From: Nageia nagi
Lineage: Eukaryota > Plantae > Pinophyta
DNA length: 64,000 nucleotides
Reading direction: 5' to 3'
NCBI GenBank assembly: GCA_050084985.1
Contig: JBITNC010000001.1
Coordinates: 143,344,001-143,408,000 of the forward strand
Positions within the stretch are counted from its first letter, which is position 1. Each line of letters begins with the position of its first letter. Shown here one piece after another: positions 20,967-50,340 of this stretch. The translations under genes were made by a program, and so were the position numbers. The notes under the pieces were generated by a model. The model was given only the letters and a program-made list of their open reading frames with translations. It had not been told where the DNA came from and ran no database searches.

Positions 20967-21032
20967 TTTAGGGTTTAGGGTATAGGGTTTAAGGTTTAGA
21001 GTATAGGGTATAAGATTTAAGGTTTAGGGTTT
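20967..21032 (+). repeat. Interstitial degenerate telomeric repeat (TTTAGGG)x9
   Basis: tttaggg tttaggg tataggg tttaagg tttagag tataggg tataaga tttaagg tttaggg ttt in exact 7-bp phase. Confidence 0.85.
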
Positions 21033-29459: not shown

Positions 29460-31604
29460 ATGTTGGTGGAGAATCGGGCTTCACAAACACAACAATCTAG
29501 AGCCAGAACATTAAAGTGTTCGAGCATTGGGTTTCATTTTGTTTTAAAAGAGATAATGCCGTCTCTTAAGAAATTGATTACATTTTCTGTTTCGCTGATG
29601 CTGTCATGGCCGTTGGTTGCCACCAAGACCTTCATCTTCAATAAGTTCAACAAATCAAGTATATTGTTGATAGAGGATGCTTTGATAAAATCTGAACAAG
29701 TTCTCACCCTTACAAATCATTCTGGGCTTTTACTTGGTCGAGCTCTATACCCTACCCCAATAACACTGAAGACAAGTAATTTTAGTAATACAGTAGTTTC
29801 TTTCAGCACTACCTTTGTGTTCTCAATTGTGAGTCCTCCTCCAGGCCCTGGTGGGCATGGGCTGGCTTTCATCATGACTCCTTCCAAGTCTCTCAATGGC
29901 GCCATGAAATCCATGTACCTTGGATTATTCAATATTACGACCAATGGACTTGAATCGAACCATTTATTTGCAGTGGAGTTCGACACACATTTGGACGTTG
30001 GATATGGGGATATCGATGACAACCATGTTGGCGTGGATCTTAACAGCCTTACGTCATTAGATTCTCAGCCTGCAGGCTATTGGACTGACGGAAAAATTCA
30101 GAAATTGAATCTAAAAAGTGGAGAGAATATGCAAGTCTGGATCGATTACGAACATTTTCGGGACCAGCTTACTGTCACTCTTGCGTTAGCCGGGATGGAG
30201 AAGCCTACCAAGCCACTGCTATCACTACGAAATTTCAATCTTTCTGGAGCTTTGACAGAAGAGATGTACGTGGGGTTTTCGTCTTCTACGGGATCCACAA
30301 ACGTTGAAAATCATTATATTCTCCGCTGGAGCTTCAGCTTGGACGGTGAGGCGCCGGTTCTTGATCTCTCCGGTCTCCCCTCTTTTATCAAAAAGAAGCC
30401 CATCACTGAATCCGGCAGATTCAAAGCGGGTATTGCTCTAGCATCCGTTATTGCCCTTATGGTCCCTGTTTTCTATCTATTCTGTTGGCTGAGGAAGCGG
30501 AGGATCAGAGAATCTATTGAGGCGTGGGAGTTGGAGTATTGGCCTCACAGGATTTCCTACAACGAGCTAGTTGCCGCCACACAAGGGTTCCGAGATGGGC
30601 AGATCGTGGGTTATGGGGGTTTCGGTCGTGTTTACAAGGGCATTCTTCCCAGAAAAGGCGTCGAAGTTGCAGTGAAATGCATCACGAAGGATTCCACGGA
30701 CGGAATGAAGGAATTTATCGCTGAAATTTCCAGTGTTGGTCGTCTCCAGCACAGGAACCTCGTCCAACTACGAGGATGGTGCAAAAAGAATAATCAGCTC
30801 TTCCTCGTCTATGATTTCATGCCAAACGGAAGCCTTGATAAGATGATATTCGGGAACCCAAAGGAAGTTCTCCCCTGGTCTCAACGCTACTCTATCCTCA
30901 AGGATATAGGGACGGGGCTCTTGTATCTTCACGAGCAATGGGATCAGAAGGTTGTTCACAGAGACGTCAAGTCCAGCAATGTGTTGCTTGATTCGGACTT
31001 CAATGCCAAGTTGGGGGATTTTGGGCTTGCTCGTCTATATGACCATACCCAAAATCCACAAACAACTCGGGTAGTTGGAACTGTCGGATATATTGCACCG
31101 GAAGTTACCAGCACAGGCAAAGTATCTTCGAGCTCTGATGCATTCAGCTTTGGGATCGTTGTACTTGAAGTTGCGTGTGGAAGAAGACCGATTGATCAAT
31201 CCAAGGGTCCGGACGAAGTTGTTCTGCTAGATTGGGTGAGGTTTTTGCATAAAAGGGGAAAACTGCTGGATTCTGTGGATCCAAATCTCAATGGAGACTA
31301 CGACACAGAGGAGGTGGAGAGAGTGCTGAAAGTGGGGCTTTATTGTTCTCATCCTCAAGCGGAATCAAGGCTTAGCATCAGAACAGCGCTACAGATACTG
31401 GAAGGGGAAGCTCCACTTCCAGGCGATGAGATCCCCTCCCCATCTCCATCGGGAATGAATTCTGAGCAATACGGCTATATTTTCCATGCAAGAGATGAGG
31501 CCGAATCATCAGTATTACAATTTGCTCCGAAGTTCGGAGATTGCGAAACCAGTTCAGCAAGCGGAGGTTATATGGAAGATTCCGATTACCAGGTAGGCAG
31601 ATAG
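29460..31604 (+). CDS. LECRK: L-type (legume) lectin-domain receptor-like Ser/Thr kinase, LecRK-S.1-like; intronless; probable true start ATG at 29556
   Basis: Intact 714-aa ORF with a signal peptide after M33, lectin motifs (SFSTTFVF, GHGLAF, AVEFDT, HVGVDLN, YVGFSSSTG), a TM helix, WELEYWPHRISY, and kinase motifs GYGGFG, VAVK, HRDVKSSN, DFG and GYIAPE. CpG is retained, unlike the flanks. Confidence 0.97.
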   Translation: MLVENRASQTQQSRARTLKCSSIGFHFVLKEIMPSLKKLITFSVSLMLSWPLVATKTFIFNKFNKSSILLIEDALIKSEQVLTLTNHSGLLLGRALYPTPITLKTSNFSNTVVSFSTTFVFSIVSPPPGPGGHGLAFIMTPSKSLNGAMKSMYLGLFNITTNGLESNHLFAVEFDTHLDVGYGDIDDNHVGVDLNSLTSLDSQPAGYWTDGKIQKLNLKSGENMQVWIDYEHFRDQLTVTLALAGMEKPTKPLLSLRNFNLSGALTEEMYVGFSSSTGSTNVENHYILRWSFSLDGEAPVLDLSGLPSFIKKKPITESGRFKAGIALASVIALMVPVFYLFCWLRKRRIRESIEAWELEYWPHRISYNELVAATQGFRDGQIVGYGGFGRVYKGILPRKGVEVAVKCITKDSTDGMKEFIAEISSVGRLQHRNLVQLRGWCKKNNQLFLVYDFMPNGSLDKMIFGNPKEVLPWSQRYSILKDIGTGLLYLHEQWDQKVVHRDVKSSNVLLDSDFNAKLGDFGLARLYDHTQNPQTTRVVGTVGYIAPEVTSTGKVSSSSDAFSFGIVVLEVACGRRPIDQSKGPDEVVLLDWVRFLHKRGKLLDSVDPNLNGDYDTEEVERVLKVGLYCSHPQAESRLSIRTALQILEGEAPLPGDEIPSPSPSGMNSEQYGYIFHARDEAESSVLQFAPKFGDCETSSASGGYMEDSDYQVGR

Positions 31605-34600
31605 GCGAATCATTAAGATAACAGATGGTTTTGTAAATGTCTCTTCTGTTTACATTCTTCTTGTACGTTAGATTTAGTTAAGCTTCAACATTCCCTTGGT
31701 TTAGGAGTTTATTAACAGTTTGATACGTTTTCCCCCTCGGCATGCAAATATTAGATGTTTTTATTTTTAAATATGTGTTTTTTTTTTTTTTAAATGTGTT
31801 TTTTTTGCATGTGTAATAGCTTTTTGCATTACTTAATTTCTGGTTTGTATTCTATACAGTTACTTTAGAGTGTTATAATTAGATTGATTGATTAGTTTCG
31901 AATTTAATAAAAAAAAGGTTAACAACATATATTTAGTTGATGTCGAATGTGAGGGAGTAATAGTCAAAGGGAGAGATGATATAAACTAAAGGAAGGTTAA
32001 TCTAGGTCTTTGTGTTCATAATTGAGTTTATCTTAATAAGTATTCAGATTTGATTGGAATCATAATTGAATTTATCTTAATAAGTATTCACAAATTTTAT
32101 TGGAATCATAAATATTGATTTTAAAAAATAAATATTTAGTAAAAATTAGATGTTAAGTTTTATTTTATATTATTTTAGATTCAAAAAAAAATTAATAAAA
32201 TTCTTAGATAAAAAAAAAGATATATATATAAGGGGAGAATAGATAATTAGTTATGGGTGCAAGTAAGAAGTTGGGTCCACTTTGAGAGGAAATGTAGAGT
32301 AAAAATTCGAGGTCAAAAATATCGAGATCCCGATATAGGTTGTCAACTAAGCCTATATTGGGATCTTGATATCTTAAAGATAGATCCCTGTCATAAGTTG
32401 TGAAGCTCATTTTTCAGCTCTGCGACCTGCAGCTCCCAACGACTGTGGAGATGACCTAGCGATTTCAGGCTCCCAATTTTGTTGCTTCCAGAGCCACCAA
32501 CTATCTCCAAATTCTCCCTACAGTGTCCCGTTAAGTGCTCCAACACATTTATTTATTTATTTTTTGTTCAAATCCACTTATTTTTCATAGTTTAGTCAAG
32601 ATAAAATAGTAGAAAGTAGGGTTTTTTTTGTTAAAATGTGTAGTTTTTTAGGAATCTTGTATAATTGTTAATTTATATATATGGTATTCAATATACCAGT
32701 AGTAACCATAGTTAGAGGTGTAAACACAATTAAATGTCAAGAATGTTTACCTTAGAATCAAAAATGTAAGTAGTGATATTGATGTTAGACTAGAAGGAGT
32801 TATAGCAATCAAAAAGGGATTGTAGGATCTCTTTCAAACCTTTCCACACTCTAAAGGCATCAACAATATAACATTTAAATCAAATAATTTCTCAAAAATA
32901 TGAGGGATTTGGTAAAAAACTTGCAACTCAAAGTATAAAAGAAAAATATAGGCATATAAACAAATGCAAAATTACTACTCAATACACTACATCTTTTTTC
33001 TTATAATATTTTTAATCATTAAATCTAAGTCTAAAATGCCTTATGAGGACTATCCTTCCTAAATCCAAAATTAACTCTATCAATCTAGGTCTAATTTACT
33101 ATTGATAAAATGTTGAAGAGCAATCACTTCTATAGGAATGCCTAGGTAGAGTCATTCAACAACAACTGTAAAAAGAATATAGTTTAAAGGAAAAGTCTTC
33201 TCATGGAGGATATTCATCAAGGTCAATGAATCATGTGTATGGGTTTATTTCTCTAACAAAATTAGAAGTGGTAATGAAGCCATTTGGATATAGGATCAAG
33301 TTTTATGTATCCAAAATAAGAGAAAATGGCTCTACCCTTTATAGGTTGCTTGTGTACCTTTGGAATGAGGTAAAATGTGTAAACTTAGGTAATGAAATTT
33401 TTTATTTTCAACAACTATTTTATCTCATTTTCGAAGATGAATGCCAAAATATAGTCAAACTAGAAAAGGTGGCTACATTTTTATCTTTCAATATGCATAA
33501 AATTTTAATAAAAAAATGAATACCAATCTTGTACATATTTCTTTAGTATATTTGGATTATCTAGGAAAAGAATAGTATACAAAGACAAGGGGTCTAACTT
33601 TAAAGGTAGAAAGAAATAAGCATGTATCTTTTATCATATTGGTTGTGCTTTAGGATAAAACTAAAATAGAAATAACACTATATCTAAAATAAGATTTTAA
33701 GGATAAATATGGTTTGAAAAATAATGGACTTAATATAGTACAATAAATATTTTAATATTTGTATATAGTAACTTTGAAAATCAAATGGTTTTCCTAGGAA
33801 TCAAAACATTTCAAACATATTATATTATTTTTTCAATAAAAATATATTAAAAAAGAGGGAATGTATAAACTAACACAAATAGAGAGATTTCTTCCACTAG
33901 ACATTTGAGCTAGATGCAAGATAAAATGTGTCTAAGCAATGCATTTCCTATTTGACATATTCTTCATAGTAAACAAGCATAGAGATATAATCATTTCCAA
34001 AGAGATCATTGATGATTTTATATTAATATTTAGGAAGGGAGATGCCTTTCACAAGGTCTAAAGAGGCTTGGTGGGTGAAGAGATAGCTAAATCCTTTAGA
34101 ATTATTGGCATAAATAAAGGGATCTAAGGGAATTATTTATAAGATTGAATAAAAATATCCAATAGCCTTATATTAGGATTTTTTAATTATGTATGAGGAT
34201 ATTAAAACTTTTCATTTGTGAAGAGAAACTTAAAAATATGAAACCATGGCTAAAATCTAATTATTTAAGCTCAAAAAATGAATAACTACTCAATATGATG
34301 AATGTTATTTTTAAATAAATTTTTGAAAAAACATAGTTGATAAATTAGACTTTCTTTCCTATTTTATACTCTTTGGGATAGCATAAATATTTTTTTAAGT
34401 TATACATACTTTTGAACTATGTTTACAATATTTTGATAATAATAGGTAGAGGATATTGAAAATATATGGATATATATTTGGTAATAATCATATATAACCC
34501 ATTAACAATGTTTCTTGCACAAACAAAGGGGATAACAAGGGATTATACAATCTTTCTTTTTAATGAGGTGGTCCTCAATAAGATTCAATCTTCTTCTTTA

Positions 34601-35848: not shown

Positions 35849-37160
35849 TCCTTATGATCATCTCCTTCAAATTCTAGCTCGATTATATTGATGTAATTCT
35901 ACACAAATTAAGGTATATCTCACTTGTAAATTTATTTATTTTTTTTCAAAACTTCAACGGTTACTCAATTTCAATCTCTTGTTTTGAATTTAAAATTTAA
36001 GATCTATACTAACATTATTTATGGTTGAGTAATGGGCTAAAATCTAACATTTTATGATAGTTACATGATTGTAGTATATATATATATAAAAGAAGGGGCT
36101 ATTTTTAATTTTTTTAAATAAATTTTTTATTTTATTTTAGAGGGATGTGGACATTTAGGGGGCCACCACCTACCCCAAGGGGGACCAACCATCCTTGGAG
36201 GTTGCAACCACCATAAGGGGAGCGAAACCCTATTGGGCCCATGTACCCTAAGGGATGACTATGCCACTTAAGGGGGATGCGTACCCATAAAGGGGATGTG
36301 AACACCCTATAAGAGGTCACTTAACCCCAAAAGGAGGTATGTGATGCCTAAGGGTTTACGTGATGCATGAGGGATTATGTAATCCTAATGTGGACCCAAC
36401 CACTTCTTAAGGGACTATGTAACCCCAAGGGGGGCATGTGCCACCCAGGGGGCTACTCAGTAAAGAAAGTAGAGCATTAACACTATAAAAATTATTTGCA
36501 CACTACCAGCACCATACATAGAACACCCATAACATTTTCAATTTTTGTACCTACATCAACAAATTGTAAGTGGATTCCAAGATCTATGCAGGTACACTAT
36601 ATTGTTTGCTAAATATAAAAAATAAAAAAAAAATCAAATACACCATGTAAATTATAGTGTATTTTATGTTTTCCATTTTTTATATTTTAATGCACTTTTT
36701 CATTTTTATAAATGCTTTGTTATGTTACTAGGTTAATAATCTTCAAGTTGTCAATAGATTTTTCTTTAAAATTTATAAAATTATATGACATGGATACTGT
36801 AAGTCTATTGGTAGGCATCCATGTCATGTGTTTCCTAGGATAGAAAAGAAAATAAAAATGCACTATGTTTCTATCTTTTATTTTAAATTATTTTAGGTAT
36901 ATGTTATGGGGTTTTAAGGTTGTTCACTTAGAAAAATATAGCCATGTTATGAATATTAAGAATTCTTGTCAAACTTGTCAATATTTTATGACTTATTAAT
37001 AATTAATTTATTTTTACATTATTGATTGCATATTATATGTTTTACAATGAGTATTGATAAATTCATTTTAATATATAATTAATAAGACTTAATTTAATCA
37101 ATAGATACATACATAAATAAAATTACACAATCATACATAACATTTTGAATAAAATGAATA

Positions 37161-37651
37161 AAATTATACTATTGTAAAATTATAATGTTATCACTCATAG
37201 CTTCCAAGAACAACAAAAAAAAAACCATAGAAATAATGTTTCAAAGTTTCAAAAAGATGTAACAACTAAATTTTCTATTGAAGAGGAAAATTTACAAATT
37301 CTCAAAAAATAGTGGTTCAAAACTAGTTTTGCCTCATACAAGGCTAATTAGTTGAACTGAATGTGAACTACTACACATATATGCATGTTTGAAAAAGTCA
37401 AAAACACTCATTCATAATAAAATAATAATATATAATTTAAATTTAATAAGATTTATAGTATTTAATATTTAAAAATATTCTTAAGAACATTAGTAAATCT
37501 TAAAACTATGAATGGAATTAAATTAGATTAAGTCTTTTCCTCATGATGAGGAATCCAAGCTTGCTTGGGTTTCTCTAGCAGATAGTGTGGAGAGAAGATA
37601 ATAAAGTATTGAAACTTATTAGTAGCAAGGTGAAGATTAGGGATTAGTGAG
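37161..37651 (-). repeat. 3' pseudo-LTR of the PLE
   Basis: Direct repeat of 47341-47863 (aaattatactatt.taaaattataatgttatcac ... aagattagggattagtga); contains the ORF 3' end. Confidence 0.9.
37315..37357 (-). ncRNA. Decayed minimal type-I hammerhead ribozyme (3' pLTR copy)
   Basis: Minus strand reads gttcaa-ctaatta-gcct-tgtatg-aggc-aaaa-ctag-tt-ttgaac. Stems I and II are intact; the CTGATGA and GAAA cores are mutated. Confidence 0.75.
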
Positions 37652-38836
37652 CCCCCAATGTTCAAGTCCATGAATGATCAACTATGGTGAAGCTTGAAAA
37701 TAAAGGGCATCTAGTTACTCCTTTTCATAGTAGGACACATATGAAGGAGTAACACTTCTTTATCTCACTAAGAAAATTTGCTAAAATAGAATCAAACAAA
37801 ACCGATGGGATAGCCTCTAGATTTCAAACATTGGTAAAAAGAGTCTCTTCATCTTACAAATATTGCTAGCTTAGATACCCAAAGTAAGTAGCATTTGATC
37901 TTAGTAATTACAAAAGAATTTTTTTAAAGAATAGGATGCCATGAGTGAAAAGGAATATATTGATAAGAATTTAATGGTTTCTAATAATGTTTAGTGTACA
38001 AAAAATCTATAGATCCAAAATCATCACCTAAAGAATGAGACATCAAGAATATCCATAGGTGAACTAGACATGCACAATGAGATTTAGATCTTTGGATAAA
38101 GGCTTTAATAGTGATCAAAGAAGCACAACAAAGACTCTTTATTACTGGACCAAACTCCAAAGGTGTCATCTATATACCTCTTAAAAATTAAGAGAGAAGA
38201 AAAATCAAAACTATCCTTAATCCATTTTTCCAAATTTCTACCCATAGTTATTCCACAGATCTATTGATAATAGGATCCATGGAATTCTAGATAATGTTAG
38301 GTAAGGATGAGCTCAACAAGATGCATAATTAGATCAATAATAGTTTGATCCAAATTGTTCATAGTTACAAACTCATAGAGAGTTGAATGGAGGGTTAAAA
38401 GATTAGTAGTTGTAGGGATATTGGGGTAAAGGGATTCCAAAACAAAGGTAAATAAAAAATAATCCAATGATAATTCATAAGAGTAAACAAAATTGAATAA
38501 GGATATAGAATTAGAGATATGATTACATTGTGAAAGAAGCATAGGAAATAATAATCTATGAACAAATAGGTCATCCTACAAGAATAGACTTGTGAAGCTT
38601 CAAAACGAGATAAAAGGCATAAGGGCAAGTTTTATTAACAAGAAGTCTTAAAAGGAAATCCTTGATAGACTTAAACAGAATGTATTTACTCACCAATTCC
38701 ATCAATTTACTCCAAAGTAGCAACCATGGTACATGGAAAATAGGGGATTAGACAACAGCATCACAAAGTTGAGGATAACCTTCATTGATATACCAATAGC
38801 GGTCTATGATGACTACACATAATTTTTTGTTAGTCA

Positions 38837-39799
38837 TGAAGATTTTGAAGAAAAATAAACTATAATGTGTATAACCAAAGCACAGTGAGGTTAACCATAG
38901 GTAGAATAAATAGCAAGATATATAAAAGACCAAAATATATTGTTTGTATTGTAAAGAAGTTAAATTTTTACAATGCTCTCTTAGAGCTAACAGGAAAAAC
39001 ATACATAGTTCTTTTAATCTAATCCTCCATTCATAGCTTACAAATAGGCTATCTAGACTTATATTAAAAATAAAATATTACATATGTGCTACTTGGTCAA
39101 AATATAATTAAATGTAGCATGGCTCCATTTTGCATAGAGTAGAGGAAGCCCATACCCTTGTATACATGATGTTTAAAACACATTAAATGGTTGTAGAAGG
39201 TAGATCAACCATTTTTTTACAAAAAAAATTAATGTCAATGTTCAAGAATTCATGTCATTAGTTGAGCATTTAATTTTGGGGTAGAAATCCCTTAAATGAA
39301 CATTTTCAAAGTGTAAATCTAGGTGTCAAAGCAAGAGGGATGTAATAGCACAATACTACTTGGGAACTTGCCTCTAAAATGGTGAAATCACTTACCAAAA
39401 ATTAAGGGGTATTATCACTACTTGCAATTCAGAAGGAAAAAATAGTTCCTCAAAATAGATAGAGCCTGAAAAAGATGTCCCAAAGAATTAACACCCAAAG
39501 AAGATGTAGTTAAATCCCAAAGTTTGAGAAGTAATAATAATGTCCAAAAAATAAATTATAGAAGCATAGTTAGTAGTTCCCAAAGCACAAGATGCCAATA
39601 GTGCCTAGGACTTGGAAGGCCTACAAATACAATAGTGCTCAAATTTCAAGAGATAAAAACTCCAATCAATAAGTCCCAGAGCATGAGGTCAATAAAGGCT
39701 AGAGAAGATGTACACTAAGGAATGGAGATAGAGCCCAGGATGGAGGAAGAGAGCCCAAATACTAAAGTAGATCCTAGAATGGAGATTAAAAAATTTTCA
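38837..39799 (-). repeat. 3' LTR of the minus-strand copia
   Basis: Direct repeat of 43937-44935. Confidence 0.9.
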
Positions 39800-42700
39800 A
39801 TTGGCCCCTTAATCTCCATGACAAAATGAGAACATTTTCTCTATTTACCAAAAAAAACACAAATACAAAGAAAAATAAAGTTAATATGTAATATAGTCAA
39901 AATTTGCCAACATTCACCCCTTGAATGTCTAGGATTTAGACTCCAAGTTGGTTCTAAATGTAGTAAAAATGATCCTTAGGCAATTGCTTAGTAAAGATTT
40001 TCTTCAACTAAATCTCTTATAAAGTGATGGCATATATCAATCTACTTTGTCGTGCTATGAAATATAGGGTTTTTGGTCATGGCAATCATGCTGAGATTGT
40101 CATAGTGCATTGAAATGGAGAGATCAATATCCATGCCCAAATATTCAAATAGATAGGCAAGCCAAATGCTTGTGTGCAAGTGGTAGAGGTAGCAATATAC
40201 TTATCTTTTGTTGATAAAAGTGTAATAGTGGGTTACTTCTTGCTACTCCATGAGACTAAAGATTCTTCAAAGAAGAATATAAACCTTGACATGCTCTTTC
40301 GACCATCAATACATTTAGTCCAATCAAAATCTATATAGGCATGTAACATTTCTTGTTCTAAGGATTTATACCAAAGCCCATATTGACATGTGCCACTCAA
40401 ATAGTGTAGGATCCATTTGGTTGCAATCCAATGTGTCTAATGTGGTGAGTGTATGAATATATCTACTTTGTTGATAGCAAACATGATTTTTGATTTGGTA
40501 GTAGTAAGATACATAAGGCTACCTATTAAGGATCAGTACATAGTGATACCAACATGTGGAAAGGATTCTTCAACAATTTGGCTTTGATAATAGTTAGTGT
40601 ATTAACAAGGCTACATCTTTGCATCTTGAAGTAGGCCTGCAAATCTTCCAAATATTTGGATTGAGTGATCAAAATTCCATTGGAGGATTGCCTTGTAGGC
40701 CAAGGAAATAATTCCTCTTTTCAAGATCACTCATCTCAAATTCACTTATAATAACATTTTTAAATTGATCTATCATAGTATCAGAGGTGCTAGTAAAAAT
40801 GATATCATCAACATACAAGTACAAAATAAAGAAGTTGCTACCTTCAACCATTATGTACAATATGCTTTCCATTGAGCATCTCTAGTAACTATTTTTCTAA
40901 AGGTAACCATTAATCCAGTGTACCATGCTCGAGGTGCTTATTTAAAGCCATAGAGAGCCTTTTTGAGTTTACACACCTCATCTACTTGATCAAGAATAAT
41001 ATATCATTCATGATGATTAACATAAATAACCTCCTTTAAATATCCATTTAAGAAAGTGGATTTGACATCCATCTGATAGATTGTTAATCCACAATGAGGT
41101 AAGTGCAAGCATAAATCTCATCGTCTCTAGCCTAGCCACTAGTGTAAAAGTCTCATCATAATCTAGCCCTTCCTTTTGAGCATATCCTTTAGCAACTACA
41201 TGGGATTTGTGCTTTGTAATACTCCCATTAGGATTATGCTTCAATTTGTAAATCCATTTAACACCAATTACCTTTTTTTCTCTAGTAGAAGGTACAAGTT
41301 CTTAGGTGTCATTCATCTAGATTTGCTCAATCTCATCTTCCATGGCTTTCTTCCACTTCCTCATTAGCAATAGCTTCAGTATATGAGGAAGGTTCAACAA
41401 ATGAAGCCATTAATGCATAAGAGATATGTATCTCTTAATTTTTAGCTTTGGTTTGTGATAAGGTAATTCTTTTATTAAGCTCTTTATCTAGCATCAATGA
41501 TGGAGGATGATAACAATCACTTATTCACTTATTCTTGGCTAGTGGAGTATAAGCACTAGGAGACTGATTTGGATATGACTACTATGGTGAGCTAGTGGAT
41601 GGTGAATATGGTGATGAAGTTTGAGGAGGAGGAGGTGCAATAGTGTGAGAAGGTTCACTATATTCATCAAAATGGAACTTAGCAATGGTGTCTTCAGCAC
41701 CATTTTCTTGATTGATTATGTCTTCTTCAAAAATCACATCTTTGTTGATGTGTATCTTACCAGTTAATGGATCATAACATATATAGGCCTTAGATGCTTT
41801 AGAGTATCCCACTAAAATACATTTGATGGATTTCTCATCAAGCTTCTTCCTATTTTCTTTTGGCACATTTACAAAAGAGGTTGAGCCAAATATTTAGAGA
41901 TGAGAAATGTTTGGCTGCACACCAAACCAAGCTTCATAAGGGGTGGTATCCTTTAAAAATTGAGTGGGACACTTATTTAAAATATAAATTGCAGCATGTA
42001 CTGCTTCACCCCAAAAACTAGTGGGATGGCCCTTTTCTTTTATCATGCATCTAGCCATCTCAATAACTATCTAGTTTTTCCATTTAGCCACTCCATTCTA
42101 CTGTGGAGTGTAGGTAGTTGTATATTGCCTAACAATATCATGCTAATGGAAGAAGTTCTTAAACTAATTTGAAATAAATTCTCCTCCTCTATAAATTTTA
42201 AACTTCTTGATAAAATAGCTAGATTATTTTTTAATAAGAGTTTTAAATTTAACAAAACTCTCAAAAGAATCTAACTTATTTTGTAGTAAATAAAGCTAGC
42301 TCATCCTAGAAAAATCATCCATAAAGATGAGCGTATATCTTGACTTACCACCTTGGTTGGGATTCTACATTAGTCCACACAAGTCTGTATGCACTAGCTG
42401 AAGTGGGTACTTGGCCCTATATTGGTGTATTTGAAACTTCACTCTGTGTTGCTTGCTTGCCATGCAACTTTCACAAACCTCACTAGGTGTATGGGAAATG
42501 GCAGGAAGGCCTCTCACCAATTTATGTAGACCATTGAATGAGTGAAAATTTAAATGAACAAATCTCCTATGCCATAACTAGGTAGAATCAATGGATGATT
42601 TTAAACAACTTACTATAGGTTTCATCTTAAGCATATACATCTTGTTTTTAGTCATATGGATGTTGGCTATAAGTTTGTTATTATCATCTTTTACAATAGT

Positions 42701-43936
42701 ACACCCTTTCCTTTTGAAGGTGGTGACATAGTCCCTTATACTAAGTTGGCCAATACTTAACAAATTATGCTTAAGGCTTGGAACAAAGAGAGTGATATGC
42801 GTATAAACTATCTTACCAGCTTTAGAATTAAAGGTAGTAGTTCCTCTACCATGGATGTTGACACTTTTGTTATCACCAAATCTAACTTGGCCTATGATAG
42901 AGGTGTCAACATTATGAAATAAGGCTTTGTTTCCAATCATGTTGTTAGAGCAACCACTATCCAAGTATCATACATCTTCTTCTTCAACTTGGAAACTACT
43001 ATAGGTGAGAAACATGCTGCTCTCAACTTGATCCTCAACATATTGAGCTTTGAGATGGGGATTCTTTTTCTAATAATGTGATTCTATGTGACCATGTTTA
43101 TTATAAAATTCAAGATATCTAAGGGTGTCATTTTGTGATCTTCCCCTAGAACAGCCTCTTCCATGACCTCTTCTACCTCTTCCATGAGAGGATGAAGAAG
43201 AACTACGAGTTGATCAAGAGGGCTCTCGACCCATTATTATCAACTATCCTTGGAAAGCTTGGTCCAAAGACTCGACTCTATCACTAATTTTATACTCATT
43301 GGTAGTTAAACTATCATGCAACTTTGCAAGCGTGAGTTGGGATAGGTACTTTGCTTCTTCAATGGAAATGTTGATGGGATCAAACCTTCTTGACAAGCTC
43401 CAAAGCACCTTTTCAACAATTATAGTGTCTTCCATCTCTTCACCGTGTGAATGAAGGGCATTTTCAAGATCTTGGATCTTGGAAAAGAAGAAACTTATAT
43501 TTTTTTCCTCTCTCATATGGAGATATTTGAACTCCTTCCTTAACATCTAGAGGTTTGCCATACGGACCTTAGCTGATCCTTTGTATGCGATCTCCAAGAT
43601 CTCCCATGCTTTCTTAGAAGTCTAACACTCTATAATTTTAGGGAAGATGGACATATCTATCCTATACTGGATGGAAAATAATGCCATGGCATCCTTCTTT
43701 TGATTCTCTAACACTTCTTTCTTCTCATCTATAGTCATGGATGCAAAGGTGACTTCATCTGAGTTGGTAAATCCCTGGGAAACAAATGTCCACAAGCCTT
43801 ATGAGATAAAAAATGTTTGCATCTGAATGCACTAGTATTCATAATGGTCTTCACTAAAAATGGGAATATACAACTATAGTGAATTTCTTTGCTTGAAATC
43901 TATTTAACCCAATAAATCTTCTGCTCTGATACCAAT

Positions 43937-44935
43937 TGAAGATTTTGAATGAAAATAAACAATAATGTGTATAGCCAAAGGATAGCGAGGTTAACCACAA
44001 GCGGAATAAACAATGAGATAAATAGGAGACCAAAATATATTATTTGTATTATAGAGAAGTACAATTTTTACAATGCTCTCTTGGAGCTAACAGGAAAAAC
44101 ATACATGATTCTTTTAATCTGCTCTTCCGTTCATAGCTTACAGATAGGCTATCTAGACTTATACTAAAAATAAAATATTACATACATGCTACTTGGTCAA
44201 AATATAATTAAATGTAGTATGGCTCCATGCATGCATTCTATCATTCTTTCTGTAGAGAGTAGAGGAAGCCCATGCCCTTGTATGCATGATGTTTGAAACA
44301 CATTACATGGTTGTAGAAGATAGATGAACCATTTTTGTACAAAAAATGTTAATGACGATGTTCAAGAATTCATGTTGGTGATTGAGCATTTAATTTTGAG
44401 GTAGAAATCTTTTAGGAGGACTTTTTTAGAGTGTAAATTTGGGTTCCAAAGTAAGAGGGATGTAATAGAGCAATAATACCTATGATCTGGGCTCTAAAAT
44501 TGTGACATCACTCACCAAAAATCGATGGGTGTTATCACTCCTCGTAACTTAGAAGGTAAAAATAATTCCTAGAATTTGTTACTGCTCGGAAAAGATAGAG
44601 CCTAGAAAAGATGTTCTAGAGAATTAACACCCAAAGAATATCTAGTTAAATCCTGAAGTTCAAGAAGTAATAATAATGCCTGGAAAACAAATCCTGAAAG
44701 CGCAAGTAGTAGTGCCCGGAGCATGAGAGGCCAATAGTGCATGGGACCAGAAAGACCTGTAGATACAATAGTGCCCAGATTTCGGGAGATAAAAACTCCA
44801 ATCAATAAATCCCAGAGTGCGGGGTAAACAGAGGCCGGAGAAGATGTACGCCAGGGAATGGAGATAGAGCCTGGGATGGAGGAAGAGAGCTCGGAGACTA
44901 TAGTGAATCCCAGAATGGAGATTAAAAATTTTTCA
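43937..44935 (-). repeat. 5' LTR of the minus-strand copia
   Basis: Adjacent to the PBS; direct repeat of 38837-39799. Confidence 0.9.
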
Positions 44936-47340
44936 AATCGGGCCGATGAAAATGGAATTATCATATGTCAAAAGCTTAAGGCTTTTCATAAGCAACCGAG
45001 GAAGGGGAGGTTTAGTAGAAAAATCACAGAAAGCTAATAATCCAAAAGTTCAAACTTGCTTATCTTGATAAAAACCTTTAATTATGGGCAAAAATCAGTA
45101 AGCTACCAGAAAGGATTAGATAAAGTAAAGGAAAATACCGAAAAAAGATCGAAGATCTCTACAGTTTGGAGTGTCAATGAGTTGGTTTGGCATGAAGAAG
45201 AAGCAAAGCCTAAGATGTATCACAAAAGCTTAAAAATCATAATGTATATCTGAAATAGACTTAGAAGAAGGCTTGGGGATGAATTTTATTCCCAAACTTA
45301 GCAACTTTTTCTCATTGTAGCTCAGTCTTCTCAAAGATAGATTATGAATCGCAAAGTTTAAGATTTGATAATCAATTTTAGAGGGAGTTTTCTTGGTAAA
45401 GAATATGAGTGAAAAGAGTGCTGAGTTAATCGCCACATCCCATCAAGTTATGTGGAAATGTGGTCGAAGGTGCCCAATGTACGTGCTTTTTTGCAAGCGC
45501 TCAGGGACGTCATGTTGAAGTTTATCCATTCGTTGAGGGTGGAATAGAATTACGTTTCATGGAGGGAGCTTATCAAGGTTGAGCATGACAATCCCTTGGA
45601 ATGGAAGAAGGCCTATGAGGAGGGTAAGAGTGGCAAATTGGATATGTTTGGTCTCGAGAAGCTAATGGACTCATATTCCGTTTGGATGATAGATGGTTGT
45701 GTAGGGAAGATAGGTTACAAGTAGAAAGAGTCCCATGAGATCTAGGAGGAGGGCGTTTCTTTCCTACATTGGATTCTCCATACACTCCAACAGATTAGAT
45801 AAGACATTAATTTGGTTGGTACTATGATCTTCCCCTTGAGCACGATGGTCCAAAGGCATTACGTGTGATATTTTGGGGAGGAGCCTCGAACAGAGCCTAT
45901 TTTTTGGCCGCCATGTAGGCGTATATGTATTCAAAGAAGGATGGCTTGTAATATCTAAATGAACATCCTTAAGTTCCTTCTAAATGGTAAAATACTTTTC
46001 CTTAAGCTTCTCATGGATGATTTGAGAAATAGACTATTCCTTGGGTAACTCGTCAGCTTCAACCATGGCTGTATCCCGAGAAGCTTGATCTGCAGATGGA
46101 GGTTGCTCCTGCACACTTTTATTTAAATCATGTTGGACGAGATAGTTATTTCATCTGATGTAAATACAATTTGGTTTCTGCAAACCAAGAAGTACAAGGT
46201 ATAGAAAAGGAGCCAATGAAAGGAAGATCTTTTACGACATTTGAAGGGATCTTGTGAAAGAAGTGATAGCACCACCAACTACAACAGCATGGTTGGTTGA
46301 TGTCTTTTCCATAGAGTCCACATAGGTTGAAAGAAAATGGGCATTGGCTTGAGATTGAATATAATCCAACTTGGAGGTCAACAAAGCCTATTCATCTGGA
46401 TCATTGATAACAATCTTAGGTGGCTTAACTTGCAAATTATTGGGTAGAGTTCTAGCCTCTTCAAAGTACTTGAGCATTAGAATATACTCAGAATATCTTT
46501 TCTCAAGTTGGTGGTAACGCTTATATTCATTAAAAGCTAAGGTGGTTAGTGAAGAAATAGATCCTAGGAATTTATCAACAAAGGATACCTGTTGATCAAA
46601 AGTCATCTAGCTGGAAAGAACGTCCAAAGGTTGAGCACCACCGATAGGAGCATCGAGCGGATGCGAAACATCAAGGAATATGTTAGTTTTATAGGTTCCT
46701 AGAGAGGGCCAATAGTGTGTACCTCAAAGGATGAAGGACTAGCAGCAACATGCGCTCTAGGACCAACAGTAGTATGAGTATTAGTAACAAAAGCGCTACA
46801 GGAAATAAACATATGACGTAGTAGTTCAGTGAGGCTTTCAAACTGAAAGGTGCAACATTCCTCAATCCATGAGAAATGATCATCATTTTGAGCCTCTAGG
46901 CTTGTAAAGCAAGCTTCATGAAGAGTAATATGATAATTTGTAAATTTTTGAAGATCTATGAATCCTTTTCGAAAAGTTTAAAATTCAAAGTTGATAAGAC
47001 CAAACGCTTGAATAGTCATTCTTGAAGAATCAACACGAGGAGCATTCAAAGGAGAAGAATGGTTATGATGTTCTGAAGGTGAAGTAATTCCAACGGGACA
47101 TATAACCATAGCCATCGTGTAATAAGAAACTCCACATCAGTCTATATCTGTGCGAAGGCACTTACGCAAAAACGAAGTAGAGAAAGGGAGTTCATCCTCG
47201 ACATGGAGAGGTGCAGTAAAAAATGGTGGATTGTGATTAATAAATTATTCTAGTCCATCAGTCGACAAAGGAGCACATCCATATGGAAGAGAAGCCAAAC
47301 CTTGCAAGTTTATGTTGGTGGCCATATTTAAGGAGAACAA

Positions 47341-47863
47341 AAATTATACTATTATAAAATTATAATGTTATCACGAGCAGCTTCCAAGAACAAACAAAAA
47401 AAAGTATAGAAAAAAGTTTCAAAGTCTCAAAAAGTTGCAATAAATAAATTTTATATTGGAGAAGAAACTTTACAAATTCTTAAAAATTAGTGGTTCAAAA
47501 CTAGTTTTGCCTAATACAAGGCTCATCAATTGAACTGAATCAAAATTGATACACATATAAACTCTTAAATATAAAGAATAATGTTTGAAAAAGTCAAAAC
47601 ACTCATTTACAATAAAATAATAATAATCATCAAAAAATGACTAATATCATTTAAATTTAATAATATTTATAGTATTTAAGATTTAAAAACATTCTTAAGA
47701 ATATTAATAAATTTAAAACTATGAATCAAATTAAATAAGATTAAGTCTATTCTTCATGAGGAGGAAGCTAAGCTTGCTTGGTTTTCTTTAATAGATAGTG
47801 GGATGAGGTAAATAATGAAGTATTTGAATGTGTTAGTAGTGATGATAAAGATTAGGGATTAGT
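47341..47863 (-). repeat. 5' pseudo-LTR of the PLE
   Basis: Direct repeat of 37161-37651; the ORF ATG lies 15 bp beyond it. Confidence 0.9.
47493..47535 (-). ncRNA. Decayed minimal type-I hammerhead ribozyme (5' pLTR copy)
   Basis: Minus strand reads gttcaa-ttgatga-gcct-tgtatt-aggc-aaaa-ctag-tt-ttgaac. This is stem I / (C>T)TGATGA / stem II / (G>A)AAA / palindromic stem III / GUH / stem I. Confidence 0.82.
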
Positions 47864-50340
47864 GATTAGTGAAATATATCTATACAAAGTCTCATGAGTG
47901 GTTACCCTTGCTACCGCTCTTACTATCTACCTTACAACTCTTGGAAGCCTCACTATCTAAAGACATGCCCAAGGACCTTGATATACCACTAGCTATGATT
48001 CCATGGGTTTCCAAGAGTGTCTTAGCCTTCCTATATTTGTCCTTGAGATCCTCTATCTCTTAGTGCAGTTGTTGATTTAACTCCATCTGCTTGGATGTAA
48101 ATGCCCAAGAATCATTAGGAGGTGGTATGGTTGACTGCTTCTCCATCCTCTTATTAACCTTATCAAGGATAATAATATAAGCATCCCTTGTAGGTAATGT
48201 AGCTTGTATCTCACTAACACTTCTCCTAAAACTAGCCACCTTGGTCTCTATGGGCTTCAATCTATCAACTTTAGCCTTAAAAGGTTGAAGGATGGCAATA
48301 TCCTCCTTAAATGTAGCTATCCTAACTATTGTATCCTCTATAAATATAATAAAAATTAACATTAATACATAAGCAAATAAAATAAACATGAAAAATATAA
48401 CAAATAAAGTTTAACTTAAACTTAAAAATTATACTTGAAGGGACTAATGGGATGGGCTCTATAAGCAGGTCTATCCCAGCTACATAGGTCCTTGAAGTTG
48501 GGGGCATCTGAGGGGGTGGCTTGTCAAGCACTATATCGATGTCCTCCTCATCATTATCATTAGATGACTCCTTGGTAGATACCTCCATACCTTCCTCCTT
48601 GCCTAACATGAGAATCCCAAGTGGGAAAGGTATGATTCCTGCACACCATACCTCATATCTTGGAATAATATTGAGGGAAAATAAGATGGCTAATGGACCA
48701 TCTACCTTAGCTGGCTTCCCCATATGCTACTCTACATGGGTGTCACTAATGCATCCTAAGGTGCATCAACCTTATATCTCTACCTCAAATACAATCTTAG
48801 TCTAGCAACTGATGTAACATTCATCTAAGATAATATGGCTCCACACCCTACCACCATGTCTATAGGAAGAAGTGCTATCTCACTTAGGAAGTTTGATGTG
48901 CATCCTCATCCCACACATAGTATTGATAGGCTAACCACTCAATATCATTATCTTGAATTCCATTTATCTCTCTCCTTTGTACCTTGATAGTGTATGGTAC
49001 CCAAAAATAACCTAAATTGAACACCCAATAATACATAATGGGATAGATATTATCATTTTTCTTCCTTGCTAGTGCAACCAACTTGAATATAACAATGTGC
49101 TTATATTCCCACACTTGTAGGAAAGAAGCATGGGCCACCATCACATTTGACTTACCCATGAACAACACATGGTGCAAGTCATAATACAACTGAGCAAGAA
49201 TGTAGGATCCCCAAGCATATGATATTCTCCTAGCATAAATATCCCTAACAATCCATACTAATCTAAGAGCAAAAATAGAGTTATTCTTATTTGAGCACAA
49301 GAACATGATAATAATGGATGTAACAAGCAACTGAAGGGTTCTAAATCCTAGATCATACTGGTAGATTGAATGCCATAGGAAGCTTGGTATTCCTAATCTA
49401 TTAGAATTTCTAATGCATTATTTTTTGGTATAAAAAATGTAACTCACTTAATTTATCTAAATACTAAAAAGTATTTATAAATATCTTTTAGTATTTATGG
49501 AATTAAATAAGTACAACTTGATCATTCTTACCTCATGTAAACCTTGGGTAAAAAGGTGAGTTAAGGTGGGGTTCCCTCCTATAAATAGAAGGCTTGGCCT
49601 TATTGTTACATACTTTGTAGGTTTATAGGATGAAAGAGAGGTTGTAGTCATTACAAGAATTATCTTTGAGAAGTAAATATCTTGAGTTAAAGTGGCGTAC
49701 TCTAATCCTTGAGAGGAACCACTATACATGCTAGTATTACTGTATGAATGTGACTGTGTTTGTGTTGTTATTGTGTGAGTTTTATTGTGGTTATGAAGAG
49801 GATGCTTCAAGGTTGATCTTGGGTAAAAGAGATTCTCCTCCTTTCAATTGGTATTAGAGTCTTCCTTGGAGGATATTTCCACTACATTTTATGAGGTAAT
49901 ATCTTTAGTAGGTATACCTCCTCCCCCTTCTCATATTTGAGTTATTTTGTATTACTATTATAATTATTATGTTAGTTCATTCTTTTTTAATAATTACTTC
50001 AAAATAACAATATTATATTGTTATAATTTTGTAGCATTAATTTGATGAAGTATAAATTATATGTATATATATTTTCTTTACAAATTATATATATTTATCA
50101 TATTTTGTAAGAAAATATATATAATTTGATGAATTTCTATAGAACATTTGCTCAAAATAACATTTTTTTTATGCTAACATTTTATGTTAGTTTTCATTTT
50201 TTGGAAAACATGCTTAATTTTCTATTCATAAATTCTTAATTTTTTGAAAAAAAAAGAGGAGTGAAAGTTCTACAATTATTTTATATGTATTCAAAATGAA
50301 TTTGTTTTCTTTAAAAAAATGTTTTTTTATTTTTTTCTTT

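What the first reader, a model, noticed from the sequence alone, without database searches (positions are those of the whole stretch)
37161..47863. Hidden Penelope-like retroelement with pseudo-LTRs but no GIY-YIG endonuclease in a seed plant
Seen: removing the copia (38837-44935 plus one TSD copy) rejoins NSIFIGP|TNKKLCVVIIDR..YINEG, a decayed DK(N)LG version of the PLE DKG motif. This gives a ~4.6-kb element with ordered PLE RT motifs (FY..KLHK..G*PICS, SLYPNIP, GITMG, YIDD, KPLNSYQYIPFHSWHP, RGYP). The ORF stops right after RNPSKLG..RLNLI, at the same position in both pLTR copies (37518 and 47731), followed by an AT-rich UTR, so there is no room for a C-terminal GIY-YIG. I saw no convincing N-terminal one either. 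Known: conifer Dryad PLEs carry a C-terminal GIY-YIG, and endonuclease-less PLEs (Athena, Coprina types) are typically telomere-associated. Inference: this may be a distinct, little-described EN-minus PLE lineage that inserts at interstitial, non-telomeric sites, with a ~2-kb N-terminal region of unknown function.
Basis: partly seen in the sequence, partly recalled or inferred. Interest (0 to 1): 0.9.

Follow-up and report, generated by a model that had tools for sequence, protein, structure and literature searches.

The report
Dead endonuclease-less Penelope retroelement, copia-split
This is a real but long-dead copy of a Penelope-like retrotransposon that naturally has no endonuclease, split by a copia element; it belongs to an old plant lineage already recorded from spike moss and conifers, so it is a well-preserved example and not a new kind of element.

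Summary
On the minus strand, 47865-37160 is one Penelope-like element (PLE). It consists of a 526-bp 5'-truncated copy (the pseudo-LTR) followed head-to-tail by a roughly 4.08-kb unit, which a 6.1-kb Ty1/copia cuts exactly at the DKNLG motif.

A 604-aa relative (P0001) aligns colinearly across the copia. The ORF ends at TAA 37520-37518, within one codon of the natural stop of intact Cryptomeria and other relatives. None of these relatives has a GIY-YIG domain, while an EN+ control does.

- The "2-kb N-terminal region" is a separate, family-conserved ORF1 with a long-helix core and a basic tail.
- Both pseudo-LTRs carry a fossil hammerhead ribozyme.
- A second, 5'-truncated copy lies at about 33441-32014.

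In trees the element sits in a gymnosperm clade (Cryptomeria, Ginkgo), nested among Selaginella and Closterium EN-minus elements and apart from an EN+ animal clade. A 2022 review already lists EN(-)PLEs for Selaginella, Pinus taeda and Picea abies.

This copy is interstitial and has no telomere array. No Dryad reference could be obtained. This scan has noted the same family before on other DNA of this genome.

The parts
47340..47865 (-). Upstream pseudo-LTR. It is a 5'-truncated partial copy holding the last ~45 codons of ORF2, its stop, and the 3' UTR.
   Evidence: Direct repeat with 37160-37650. Its ORF end reads RKPSKLSFLLMKNRLNLI-stop.
47478..47545 (-). Fossil hammerhead ribozyme in the upstream pseudo-LTR. 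The core reads UUGAUGA...AAAA, i.e. C3>U and G12>A.
   Evidence: Covariance model R1, built only from relatives' hammerheads, scores 34.5 bits, E 3.3e-7. Rfam itself gave nothing at E<=10.
46538..47339 (-). 5' UTR plus the variable N-terminal part of ORF1. No homology was detected here.
   Evidence: It lies between the pseudo-LTR end and the ORF1 core. No Pfam or tblastn match was found.
45920..46537 (-). Remnant of the conserved helical core of ORF1, read in one frame with 3 stops.
   Evidence: L002 ORF1 residues 121-330 align here, 26% identity over 214 aa, E 1.9e-13. Ginkgo P0002 residues 26-85 align to 46150-45971. The ORF1 core occurs upstream of the RT in about 40 related loci.
44939..45436 (-). 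ORF2 (RT protein) N-terminal part, running up to the DKNLG motif.
   Evidence: P0001 residues 1-173, 40% identity.
38837..44935 (-). Nested Ty1/copia LTR retrotransposon, itself decayed.
   Evidence: LTR pair at 83% identity, K2P 0.196. Pfam finds RVT_2, Retrotran_gag_2, Pol_BBD and SH3_retrovirus on the minus strand.
37518..38843 (-). ORF2 continuation: RT fingers and palm (SLYPNIP, GITMG, YIDD), thumb (YQYIPFHSWHP, RGYP), C-terminal linker and the natural stop TAA at 37520-37518.
   Evidence: P0001 residues 171-600 map to 38843-37633. P0014 residues 605-622 of 626 map to 37583-37530.
37160..37650 (-). Downstream pseudo-LTR copy, i.e. the 3' end of the full unit.
37300..37367 (-). Fossil hammerhead ribozyme in the downstream copy. 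The core reads CUAAUUA...AAAA, i.e. G5>A, G8>U and G12>A.
   Evidence: Model R1 scores 24.1 bits, E 3.9e-4. The next best hit in the whole 64-kb window is 15.4 bits, E 0.15.
32014..33441 (-). Second, more decayed, 5'-truncated or interrupted copy of the same PLE lineage (RT residues ~225-461 plus a weak 3' UTR match).
   Evidence: tblastn with P0001 and many relatives hits 33441-32742. A weak 3' UTR match lies at 32202-32014. It groups with the main copy in the tree, on a long branch.

Best explanation
The region is an old, inactive insertion of a two-ORF, endonuclease-deficient Penelope-like retroelement. It belongs to the streptophyte EN(-) lineage, the same lineage as the Selaginella EN- PLEs and the EN(-)PLEs listed for conifers.

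Anatomy, shown here:
- ORF1 is a long-helix protein with a basic tail.
- ORF2 is a PLE reverse transcriptase that ends in the linker, at the point where EN+ PLEs continue into GIY-YIG.
- The 3' UTR carries a type-I hammerhead ribozyme.
- The copy is a partial tandem: a 526-bp 5'-truncated copy sits directly upstream of a near full-length unit.
- A copia element later inserted into ORF2, and the whole structure decayed by transitions, frameshifts and a small deletion.

Mechanism, inferred from what is published for EN- PLEs:
- Having no nuclease, the RT primes cDNA synthesis on a pre-existing free 3'-OH. This could be a telomeric G-overhang, a telomere-like seed or a broken end.
- The hammerhead processes the multimeric or read-through transcript.
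- The partial tandem arose either by template jumping or by a second terminal addition.

Whether this site was a chromosome end or an internal break at the time of insertion is not settled.
For: - PLE-type RT: a phmmer search with a 92-aa piece found P0001 at E 7e-14, and P0001 aligns colinearly over 600 residues. P0001 is 33% identical (E 9e-67) to P0097, which carries RVT_1 plus GIY-YIG.
- EN absence is a family trait: P0014, P0016, P0017, P0019, P0021, P0022, P0023 and P0024 all end 10-15 aa after ICWRNPRKLGSFLxRSR, and the window stops at the same place. Pfam finds no GIY-YIG in 9 relatives or in 5 ORF1 sequences, but does find it in the control.
- Phylogeny: the main copy sits inside a Cryptomeria/Ginkgo clade (SH-aLRT 97-99). 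Unnamed metagenome relatives come next, then Selaginella (99), then Closterium. A 100% branch separates all of these from the EN+ animal clade.
- ORF1. The AF2 model is all long helices, pLDDT 84.
- Hammerhead: 37 of 65 related loci carry the core (36 of them on the sense strand), and Rfam HH9 scores E 1.7e-4 in three loci. The model built from relatives hits only the two pseudo-LTRs in the window.
- Telomere link in relatives: CCCTAAA arrays or dense CCCTAA lie 150-600 nt 3' of the hammerhead in L010, L011, L013, L030 and L038.
- Literature: PMC9033089, PMC4209133, PMC8557442.
Against: - This copy has no telomere array at any junction. There are only single 1-mismatch heptamers near two junctions, each about p 0.03-0.05 and noticed post hoc.
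- It lies next to an intact lectin receptor kinase gene. According to the scan index it is more than 140 Mb from another noted locus on the same sequence, so it is not terminal today.
- No target-site duplication or empty site could be examined.
- The clade name (Coprina-like) rests on published descriptions. It does not rest on a tree with curated Coprina, Athena or Dryad references, because none could be fetched.
The ORF1, hammerhead and telomere-tail evidence therefore comes from more distant metagenome relatives.
Confidence: 0.88

Rival explanations
1. The gymnosperm branch of this EN- lineage has a genuinely different, genome-wide integration mode. It would insert at internal sites by some route that needs neither its own nuclease nor telomere ends, for example by using breaks, replication intermediates or another element's nicks.
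For: Two independent copies lie within 15 kb in a gene-bearing interstitial region, and neither is joined to a telomere array. Most related loci with enough 3' sequence also lack CCCTAA clusters. EN- PLE-X families with genome-wide distribution are reported for Chara (PMC8557442).
Against: Two decayed copies cannot show an insertion preference. Relatives of the same clade end in telomere arrays. Single telomere-like heptamers sit at two junctions. EN-independent insertion at breaks is a known side route for retroelements and would not need a new mechanism.
Confidence: 0.25
2. The structure is a relic of a terminal or subterminal chain. A full-length unit was added to a chromosome end, a second 5'-truncated unit was added on top of it, and rearrangement later internalised the chain.
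For: The head-to-tail pair of a short 5'-truncated copy and a full unit is the pattern formed by successive terminal additions. CCTTAAA sits 5-6 nt after the 3' end of the upstream copy, and an extra CACTAAT unit sits at its 5' boundary. A degenerate TTTAGGG array in the matching orientation lies at 20967-21029.
Against: The same architecture is the ordinary pseudo-LTR of all PLEs (PMC8557442). The heptamers are single and imperfect. The telomere array is 16 kb away with no PLE sequence next to it. An intact gene and other TEs lie between.
Confidence: 0.15
3. It is a degraded Dryad or other EN+ PLE whose GIY-YIG was lost in this copy by truncation or decay.
For: Dryads are the best-known PLEs of conifers (PMC8557442, PMC9370799). 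No Dryad reference was in the tree.
Against: Both copies stop at the same codon, and so do at least 8 intact relatives. A conserved 3' UTR with a hammerhead follows directly. The nearest relatives are EN- elements of Selaginella and Closterium, not the EN+ clade.
Confidence: 0.02

Closest known systems
EN(-) PLEs of Selaginella moellendorffii (Gladyshev & Arkhipova 2007; hammerheads described in Cervera & de la Pena 2014, PMC4209133)
   Same: There is no endonuclease. The RT is homologous: Selaginella protein P0026 is 44% identical to P0001 and branches just outside the seed-plant-containing clade. A type-I hammerhead lies in the pseudo-LTR.
   Different: The Selaginella elements are reported as telomere-associated, whereas this copy is interstitial. 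I did not confirm that P0026 is the published element.
EN(-)PLEs listed for Pinus taeda and Picea abies (review PMC9033089, Table 1, citing Lin et al. 2016)
   Same: They are seed-plant hosts and EN-minus PLEs. This is most likely the same lineage as the Cryptomeria and Ginkgo relatives found here.
   Different: The primary paper (PMC4860704) is not held, so sequence identity, ORF1, hammerhead and genomic distribution could not be compared.
Coprina and Athena EN- PLE clades
   Same: They have no EN. A hammerhead lies next to reverse-complement telomere repeats at the 3' end in several relatives. They form head-to-tail chains of 5'-truncated copies. An upstream ORF has long helices.
   Different: This copy has no telomere repeats at its 3' end. 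Clade membership was not tested against curated references.
Dryad (conifer EN+ PLE, Penelope/Poseidon group)
   Same: It has a gymnosperm host, a PLE RT, pseudo-LTRs and a hammerhead.
   Different: Dryads carry a C-terminal GIY-YIG and are attributed to horizontal transfer from arthropods. This family stops before the EN position and has relatives throughout streptophytes.
Chlamys-derived EN- PLE-X families (Chara, Selaginella; PMC8557442)
   Same: They are EN-minus PLEs of the green lineage with canonical hammerheads. Some have genome-wide distribution.
   Different: PLE-X proteins keep the CxC motif and an N-terminal CxCX1-8C extension. No conserved CxC is present in the alignment of this family, and the DKNLG motif is of the canonical DKG kind.

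Membership tests
Penelope-like elements (PLE) | RT of the PLE type, including the N-terminal motifs and the DKG motif | tested here: met
   The window is colinear with P0001 over 600 residues. ADKNLG is invariant in the family. The family is homologous to RT+GIY-YIG proteins (P0097).
Penelope-like elements (PLE) | Pseudo-LTR formed by a partial tandem copy | tested here: met
   47865-47340 repeats 37650-37160 and lies directly upstream of the full unit.
Penelope-like elements (PLE) | Hammerhead ribozyme in the pseudo-LTR | tested here: met
   Model R1, built from relatives, hits both pseudo-LTRs and nothing else. The cores are mutated, so these copies are predicted to be inactive.
EN+ PLEs with C-terminal GIY-YIG (Penelope/Poseidon including Dryad, Neptune, Nematis, Hydra) | GIY-YIG domain after the RT thumb and linker | tested here: not met
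   The natural stop is at 37520-37518, and intact relatives stop at the same position. Pfam finds no GIY-YIG in relatives, while the control is positive.
Dryad | RT groups with conifer Dryads and arthropod Poseidon-like elements | not testable with these tools
   No Dryad sequence could be obtained. The only EN+ clade retrieved is an animal clade that includes a sponge protein.
Naiad/Chlamys | N-terminal GIY-YIG and a CxC linker motif | tested here: not met
   No GIY-YIG was found in ORF1 or ORF2 of relatives or in the window pieces. No conserved CxC occurs in alignment A1.
Telomere-attaching EN- PLEs (Athena/Coprina type) | Absence of any endonuclease domain | tested here: met
Telomere-attaching EN- PLEs (Athena/Coprina type) | Reverse-complement telomere repeats at the 3' end, next to the hammerhead | tested here: inconclusive
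   They are present in relatives L010, L011, L013, L030 and L038. They are absent from this copy's 3' end. Only single near-matches occur at two other junctions.
Telomere-attaching EN- PLEs (Athena/Coprina type) | Location at chromosome ends | tested here: not met
   The copy is flanked by a PMD-type element and lies about 5.5 kb from an intact lectin receptor kinase gene. No telomere array adjoins it.

The most novel reading that the evidence does not exclude
In gymnosperms this ancient EN-minus, two-ORF, hammerhead-bearing PLE lineage has left the telomere and spreads through chromosome interiors without a nuclease of its own. It would use short telomere-like seeds or breaks as primers. If so, it would be a natural system for studying nuclease-independent retrotransposition and the step from telomere-attached RT to dispersed element.
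Probability: 0.2. Interest if true: 0.6.

Novelty: new member of a known kind. Interest (0 to 1): 0.35.

Why it matters
EN-minus PLEs are the closest mobile relatives of telomerase, and in plants they are known in detail only from Selaginella. This locus gives a nearly complete anatomy for a seed-plant member: ORF1, an RT ORF with its natural stop, a hammerhead and a partial tandem. It also shows that such copies occur inside chromosomes next to genes. That is useful for annotation, because the Cryptomeria and Ginkgo relatives are currently 'uncharacterized proteins' or gene models, and because conifer 'Penelope' counts are usually equated with Dryads. It also frames a testable question about nuclease-free insertion. 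It does not overturn anything known.

Tried and rejected
- Pfam on ten stop-free pieces of the element gave nothing useful because the pieces are too short and decayed.
- A word-indexed protein search with the 92-aa piece was blank.
- Rfam found no hammerhead in the region or in either pseudo-LTR at E<=10. It found none at gathering score in 20 related loci. Only permissive thresholds and a purpose-built model showed it.
- The third protein search, with EN+ P0097, returned a single animal EN+ clade and no Dryad.
- Gladyshev 2007, Lin 2016 and Arkhipova 2017 are not held.
- A profile search of PDB sequences gave no hit.
- Foldseek of the ORF1 model gave only generic long-helix proteins, best E 0.18.
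- The look-up of sequencing runs gave two coded runs holding 6% of the words.
- A 124-row tree did not finish, so smaller sets were used.
- I looked for a PLE 3' end next to the telomere array at 20967-21029 and for ORF1 or DNA homology between the two copies. None was found.
- The read-through of the broken ORF, with X at every stop and join, was made only inside a script for the tree.
Full report
**Observation.** The feature lies on the minus strand. Repeat finding and self-BLAST show a direct repeat at 47865-47340 and 37650-37160. It is 79% identical over 530 columns by blastn and 86% in a global alignment (K2P 0.15). Between the two arms sits an LTR retrotransposon with LTRs at 38837-39799 and 43937-44935, K2P 0.196. 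Its minus-strand ORFs hit copia-type gag, Pol_BBD, SH3_retrovirus and RVT_2 in Pfam. The 5-mers flanking it, AGTCA and AATCG, differ by two transitions, which is acceptable for a duplication of that age.

**Homologues.** Pieces of the frame were too short for Pfam and for the word-indexed search. A full phmmer search with the 92-aa piece 38575-38300 found 12 proteins, the best being P0001 (604 aa) at E 7e-14.
- P0001 aligns colinearly across the copia. Residues 1-173 map to 45436-44939, 171-262 to 38843-38568, 277-468 to 38566-38027 and 469-600 to 38028-37633.
- A search with P0001 gave 583 relatives. They include Cryptomeria japonica 'uncharacterized proteins' (59-66% identical), two Ginkgo gene models, a Selaginella moellendorffii protein (44%) and Closterium proteins.

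**No endonuclease.**
- Eight intact relatives of 602-626 aa end 10-15 residues after ICWRNPRKLGSFLxRSR.
- The window reads IC*RNPSKLGFLIMRKRLNLI-TAA, with the stop at 37520-37518. The upstream copy reads RKPSKLSFLLMKNRLNLI-stop.
- Pfam finds no GIY-YIG in nine relatives. It does find one at residues 710-793 of the EN+ control P0097, which is 33% identical to P0001.
- No GIY-YIG appears in five ORF1 proteins of relatives or in the window's upstream pieces.

Absence of the nuclease is therefore a family trait and not damage to this copy.

**The upstream 1.9 kb is ORF1.** A scan of metagenome contigs with an alignment of the family returned 65 loci.
- Several loci are head-to-tail tandems with two ORFs per unit.
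- ORF1 of locus L002 (residues 121-330) aligns to window 46537-45920 in one frame with three stops, E 1.9e-13.
- The same ~210-aa core occurs upstream of the RT ORF in about 40 loci.
- The N-terminus of the Ginkgo model P0002 matches its end.
- ORF1 has no Pfam family. An AlphaFold model of the core is confident (pLDDT 84) and made of four or five long helices. Foldseek gives only generic long-helix proteins.
- In L002 the core is followed by a strongly basic Q/R/K/G-rich tail.

A role in oligomerisation and RNA binding, as for ORF1 proteins of other retroelements, is an inference.

**Hammerhead.** Rfam reported none in the window.
- In the relatives, a hammerhead core lies a few hundred bases 3' of the RT stop, or in upstream partial copies, in 37 of 65 loci, on the sense strand in 36 of them. 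Rfam HH9 reaches E 1.7e-4 in three of them.
- A covariance model built from 21 distinct hammerheads of relatives was run without filters over all 64 kb.
- It gave two significant hits, both on the minus strand and at homologous places in the two pseudo-LTRs. These are 47545-47478 (34.5 bits, E 3.3e-7) and 37367-37300 (24.1 bits, E 3.9e-4). The next hit scores 15.4 bits.
- Helix I (GUUCAA/UUGAAC) and helix II (GCC/GGC) are intact. The catalytic core is mutated: UUGAUGA and AAAA in one copy, CUAAUUA and AAAA in the other.

This agrees with a separate first-stage note on the same window.

**Phylogeny.** For the tree only, the broken ORF was read through inside a script with X at each stop and join.
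- In an LG+G4 tree of 54 rows and a mixture-model tree of 34 rows, the main copy falls with P0001 inside a clade holding the Cryptomeria and Ginkgo sequences (SH-aLRT 97-99).
- Unnamed metagenome sequences come next, then Selaginella (99), then Closterium.
- An EN+ animal clade (P0097, and a sponge protein) is separated by a 100% branch.
- These are quick-search supports. The careful run did not finish.
- No Dryad, Coprina or Athena reference could be fetched, so the named clade is not established by a tree.

**Telomere link.** In relatives L010, L011, L013, L030 and L038, dense CCCTAA or perfect (CCCTAAA)n arrays follow the hammerhead by 150-600 nt on the sense strand. Locus L039 begins with such an array. 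Most other loci with enough 3' sequence have none. In the window the 3' end at 37160 is followed by unrelated AT-rich DNA. The only telomere array (20967-21029) has no PLE sequence beside it.

Two small coincidences remain unexplained:
- The 5' boundary of the upstream copy falls on CACTAAT-CACTAAT-CCCTAAT, and the first unit lies outside the homology.
- CCTTAAA lies 5-6 nt beyond that copy's 3' end.

With 1.9 near-matches per kb per strand, each has a chance of roughly 0.03-0.05, and both were noticed post hoc.

**Context and age.**
- The upstream flank is a plant-mobile-domain ORF that ends 27 nt before the element.
- An intact 714-aa L-type lectin receptor kinase gene lies at 29460-31604.
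- A second, more decayed and 5'-truncated copy of the same lineage lies at about 33441-32014. It has no detectable DNA similarity to the first copy.
- Pseudo-LTR and copia LTR divergences (K2P 0.15 and 0.20) indicate tens of millions of years under commonly used gymnosperm rates (my assumption). The element's CpG observed/expected ratio is 0.38.

**Literature.**
[quoted passage not shown] It also states that EN- families arise within EN+ clades, and that some EN- PLE-X families of Chara are genome-wide.
- PMC4209133 describes canonical type-I hammerheads in Selaginella EN- PLEs.
- The review PMC9033089 lists EN(-)PLEs for Selaginella, Pinus taeda and Picea abies.
- The primary papers (Gladyshev 2007, Lin 2016, Arkhipova 2017) are not held.

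Earlier notes of this scan describe the same family elsewhere in this genome. I treated them as leads and re-derived the points I use here.

**Verdict.** It is wrong on 'N-terminal extension' and overstated on novelty. The interstitial position is real for this copy, but it does not by itself show a new integration mode.

Noticed in passing
window 32014-33441 (minus): A second, more decayed, 5'-truncated copy of the same EN- PLE lineage lies 3.7 kb downstream of the first copy and in the same orientation. No hammerhead or ORF1 is recognisable in it.
   Followed up: partly
window 29460-31604 (plus): An intact, intronless 714-aa L-type lectin receptor-like kinase ORF (Lectin_legB E 9e-75, Pkinase E 1e-49). 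This is a host gene in an otherwise TE-rich, AT-rich window.
   Followed up: partly
window 20967-21029 (plus): A short degenerate interstitial array of about nine TTTAGGG units. Its orientation would fit a minus-strand EN- PLE attached to it, but no PLE sequence is detectable next to it.
   Followed up: partly
window 47851-47871 and 47327-47333 (minus): Telomere-like heptamers sit at the 5' boundary of the upstream partial copy (CACTAAT CACTAAT CCCTAAT) and 5-6 nt after its 3' end (CCTTAAA). The element-internal units encode the conserved peptide (T/S)L(N/I)P(K/N)L.
   Followed up: partly
window 48060-49330 (minus): Plant mobile domain (PMD, E 1.8e-9) ORF fragments lie immediately upstream of the PLE. 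The PLE starts 27 nt after the stop of the last ORF.
   Followed up: no
L018:2028-10331; also L011, L013: Metagenome relatives are head-to-tail tandems of ORF1+ORF2 units. Their ORF1 carries long Pro/Asn-rich low-complexity stretches.
   Followed up: partly
P0002, P0004 (Ginkgo gene models); P0014-P0020 (Cryptomeria RefSeq proteins): Public annotations treat members of this retroelement family as host genes or 'uncharacterized proteins'. P0004 fuses the PLE RT to an unrelated N-terminal part that has a weak RT_RNaseH_2 match.
   Followed up: no
whole window: GC content is 31% and the CpG observed/expected ratio is 0.21. Copia LTR differences are dominated by transitions (121 ts against 41 tv), consistent with heavy methylation-driven decay.
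   Followed up: no
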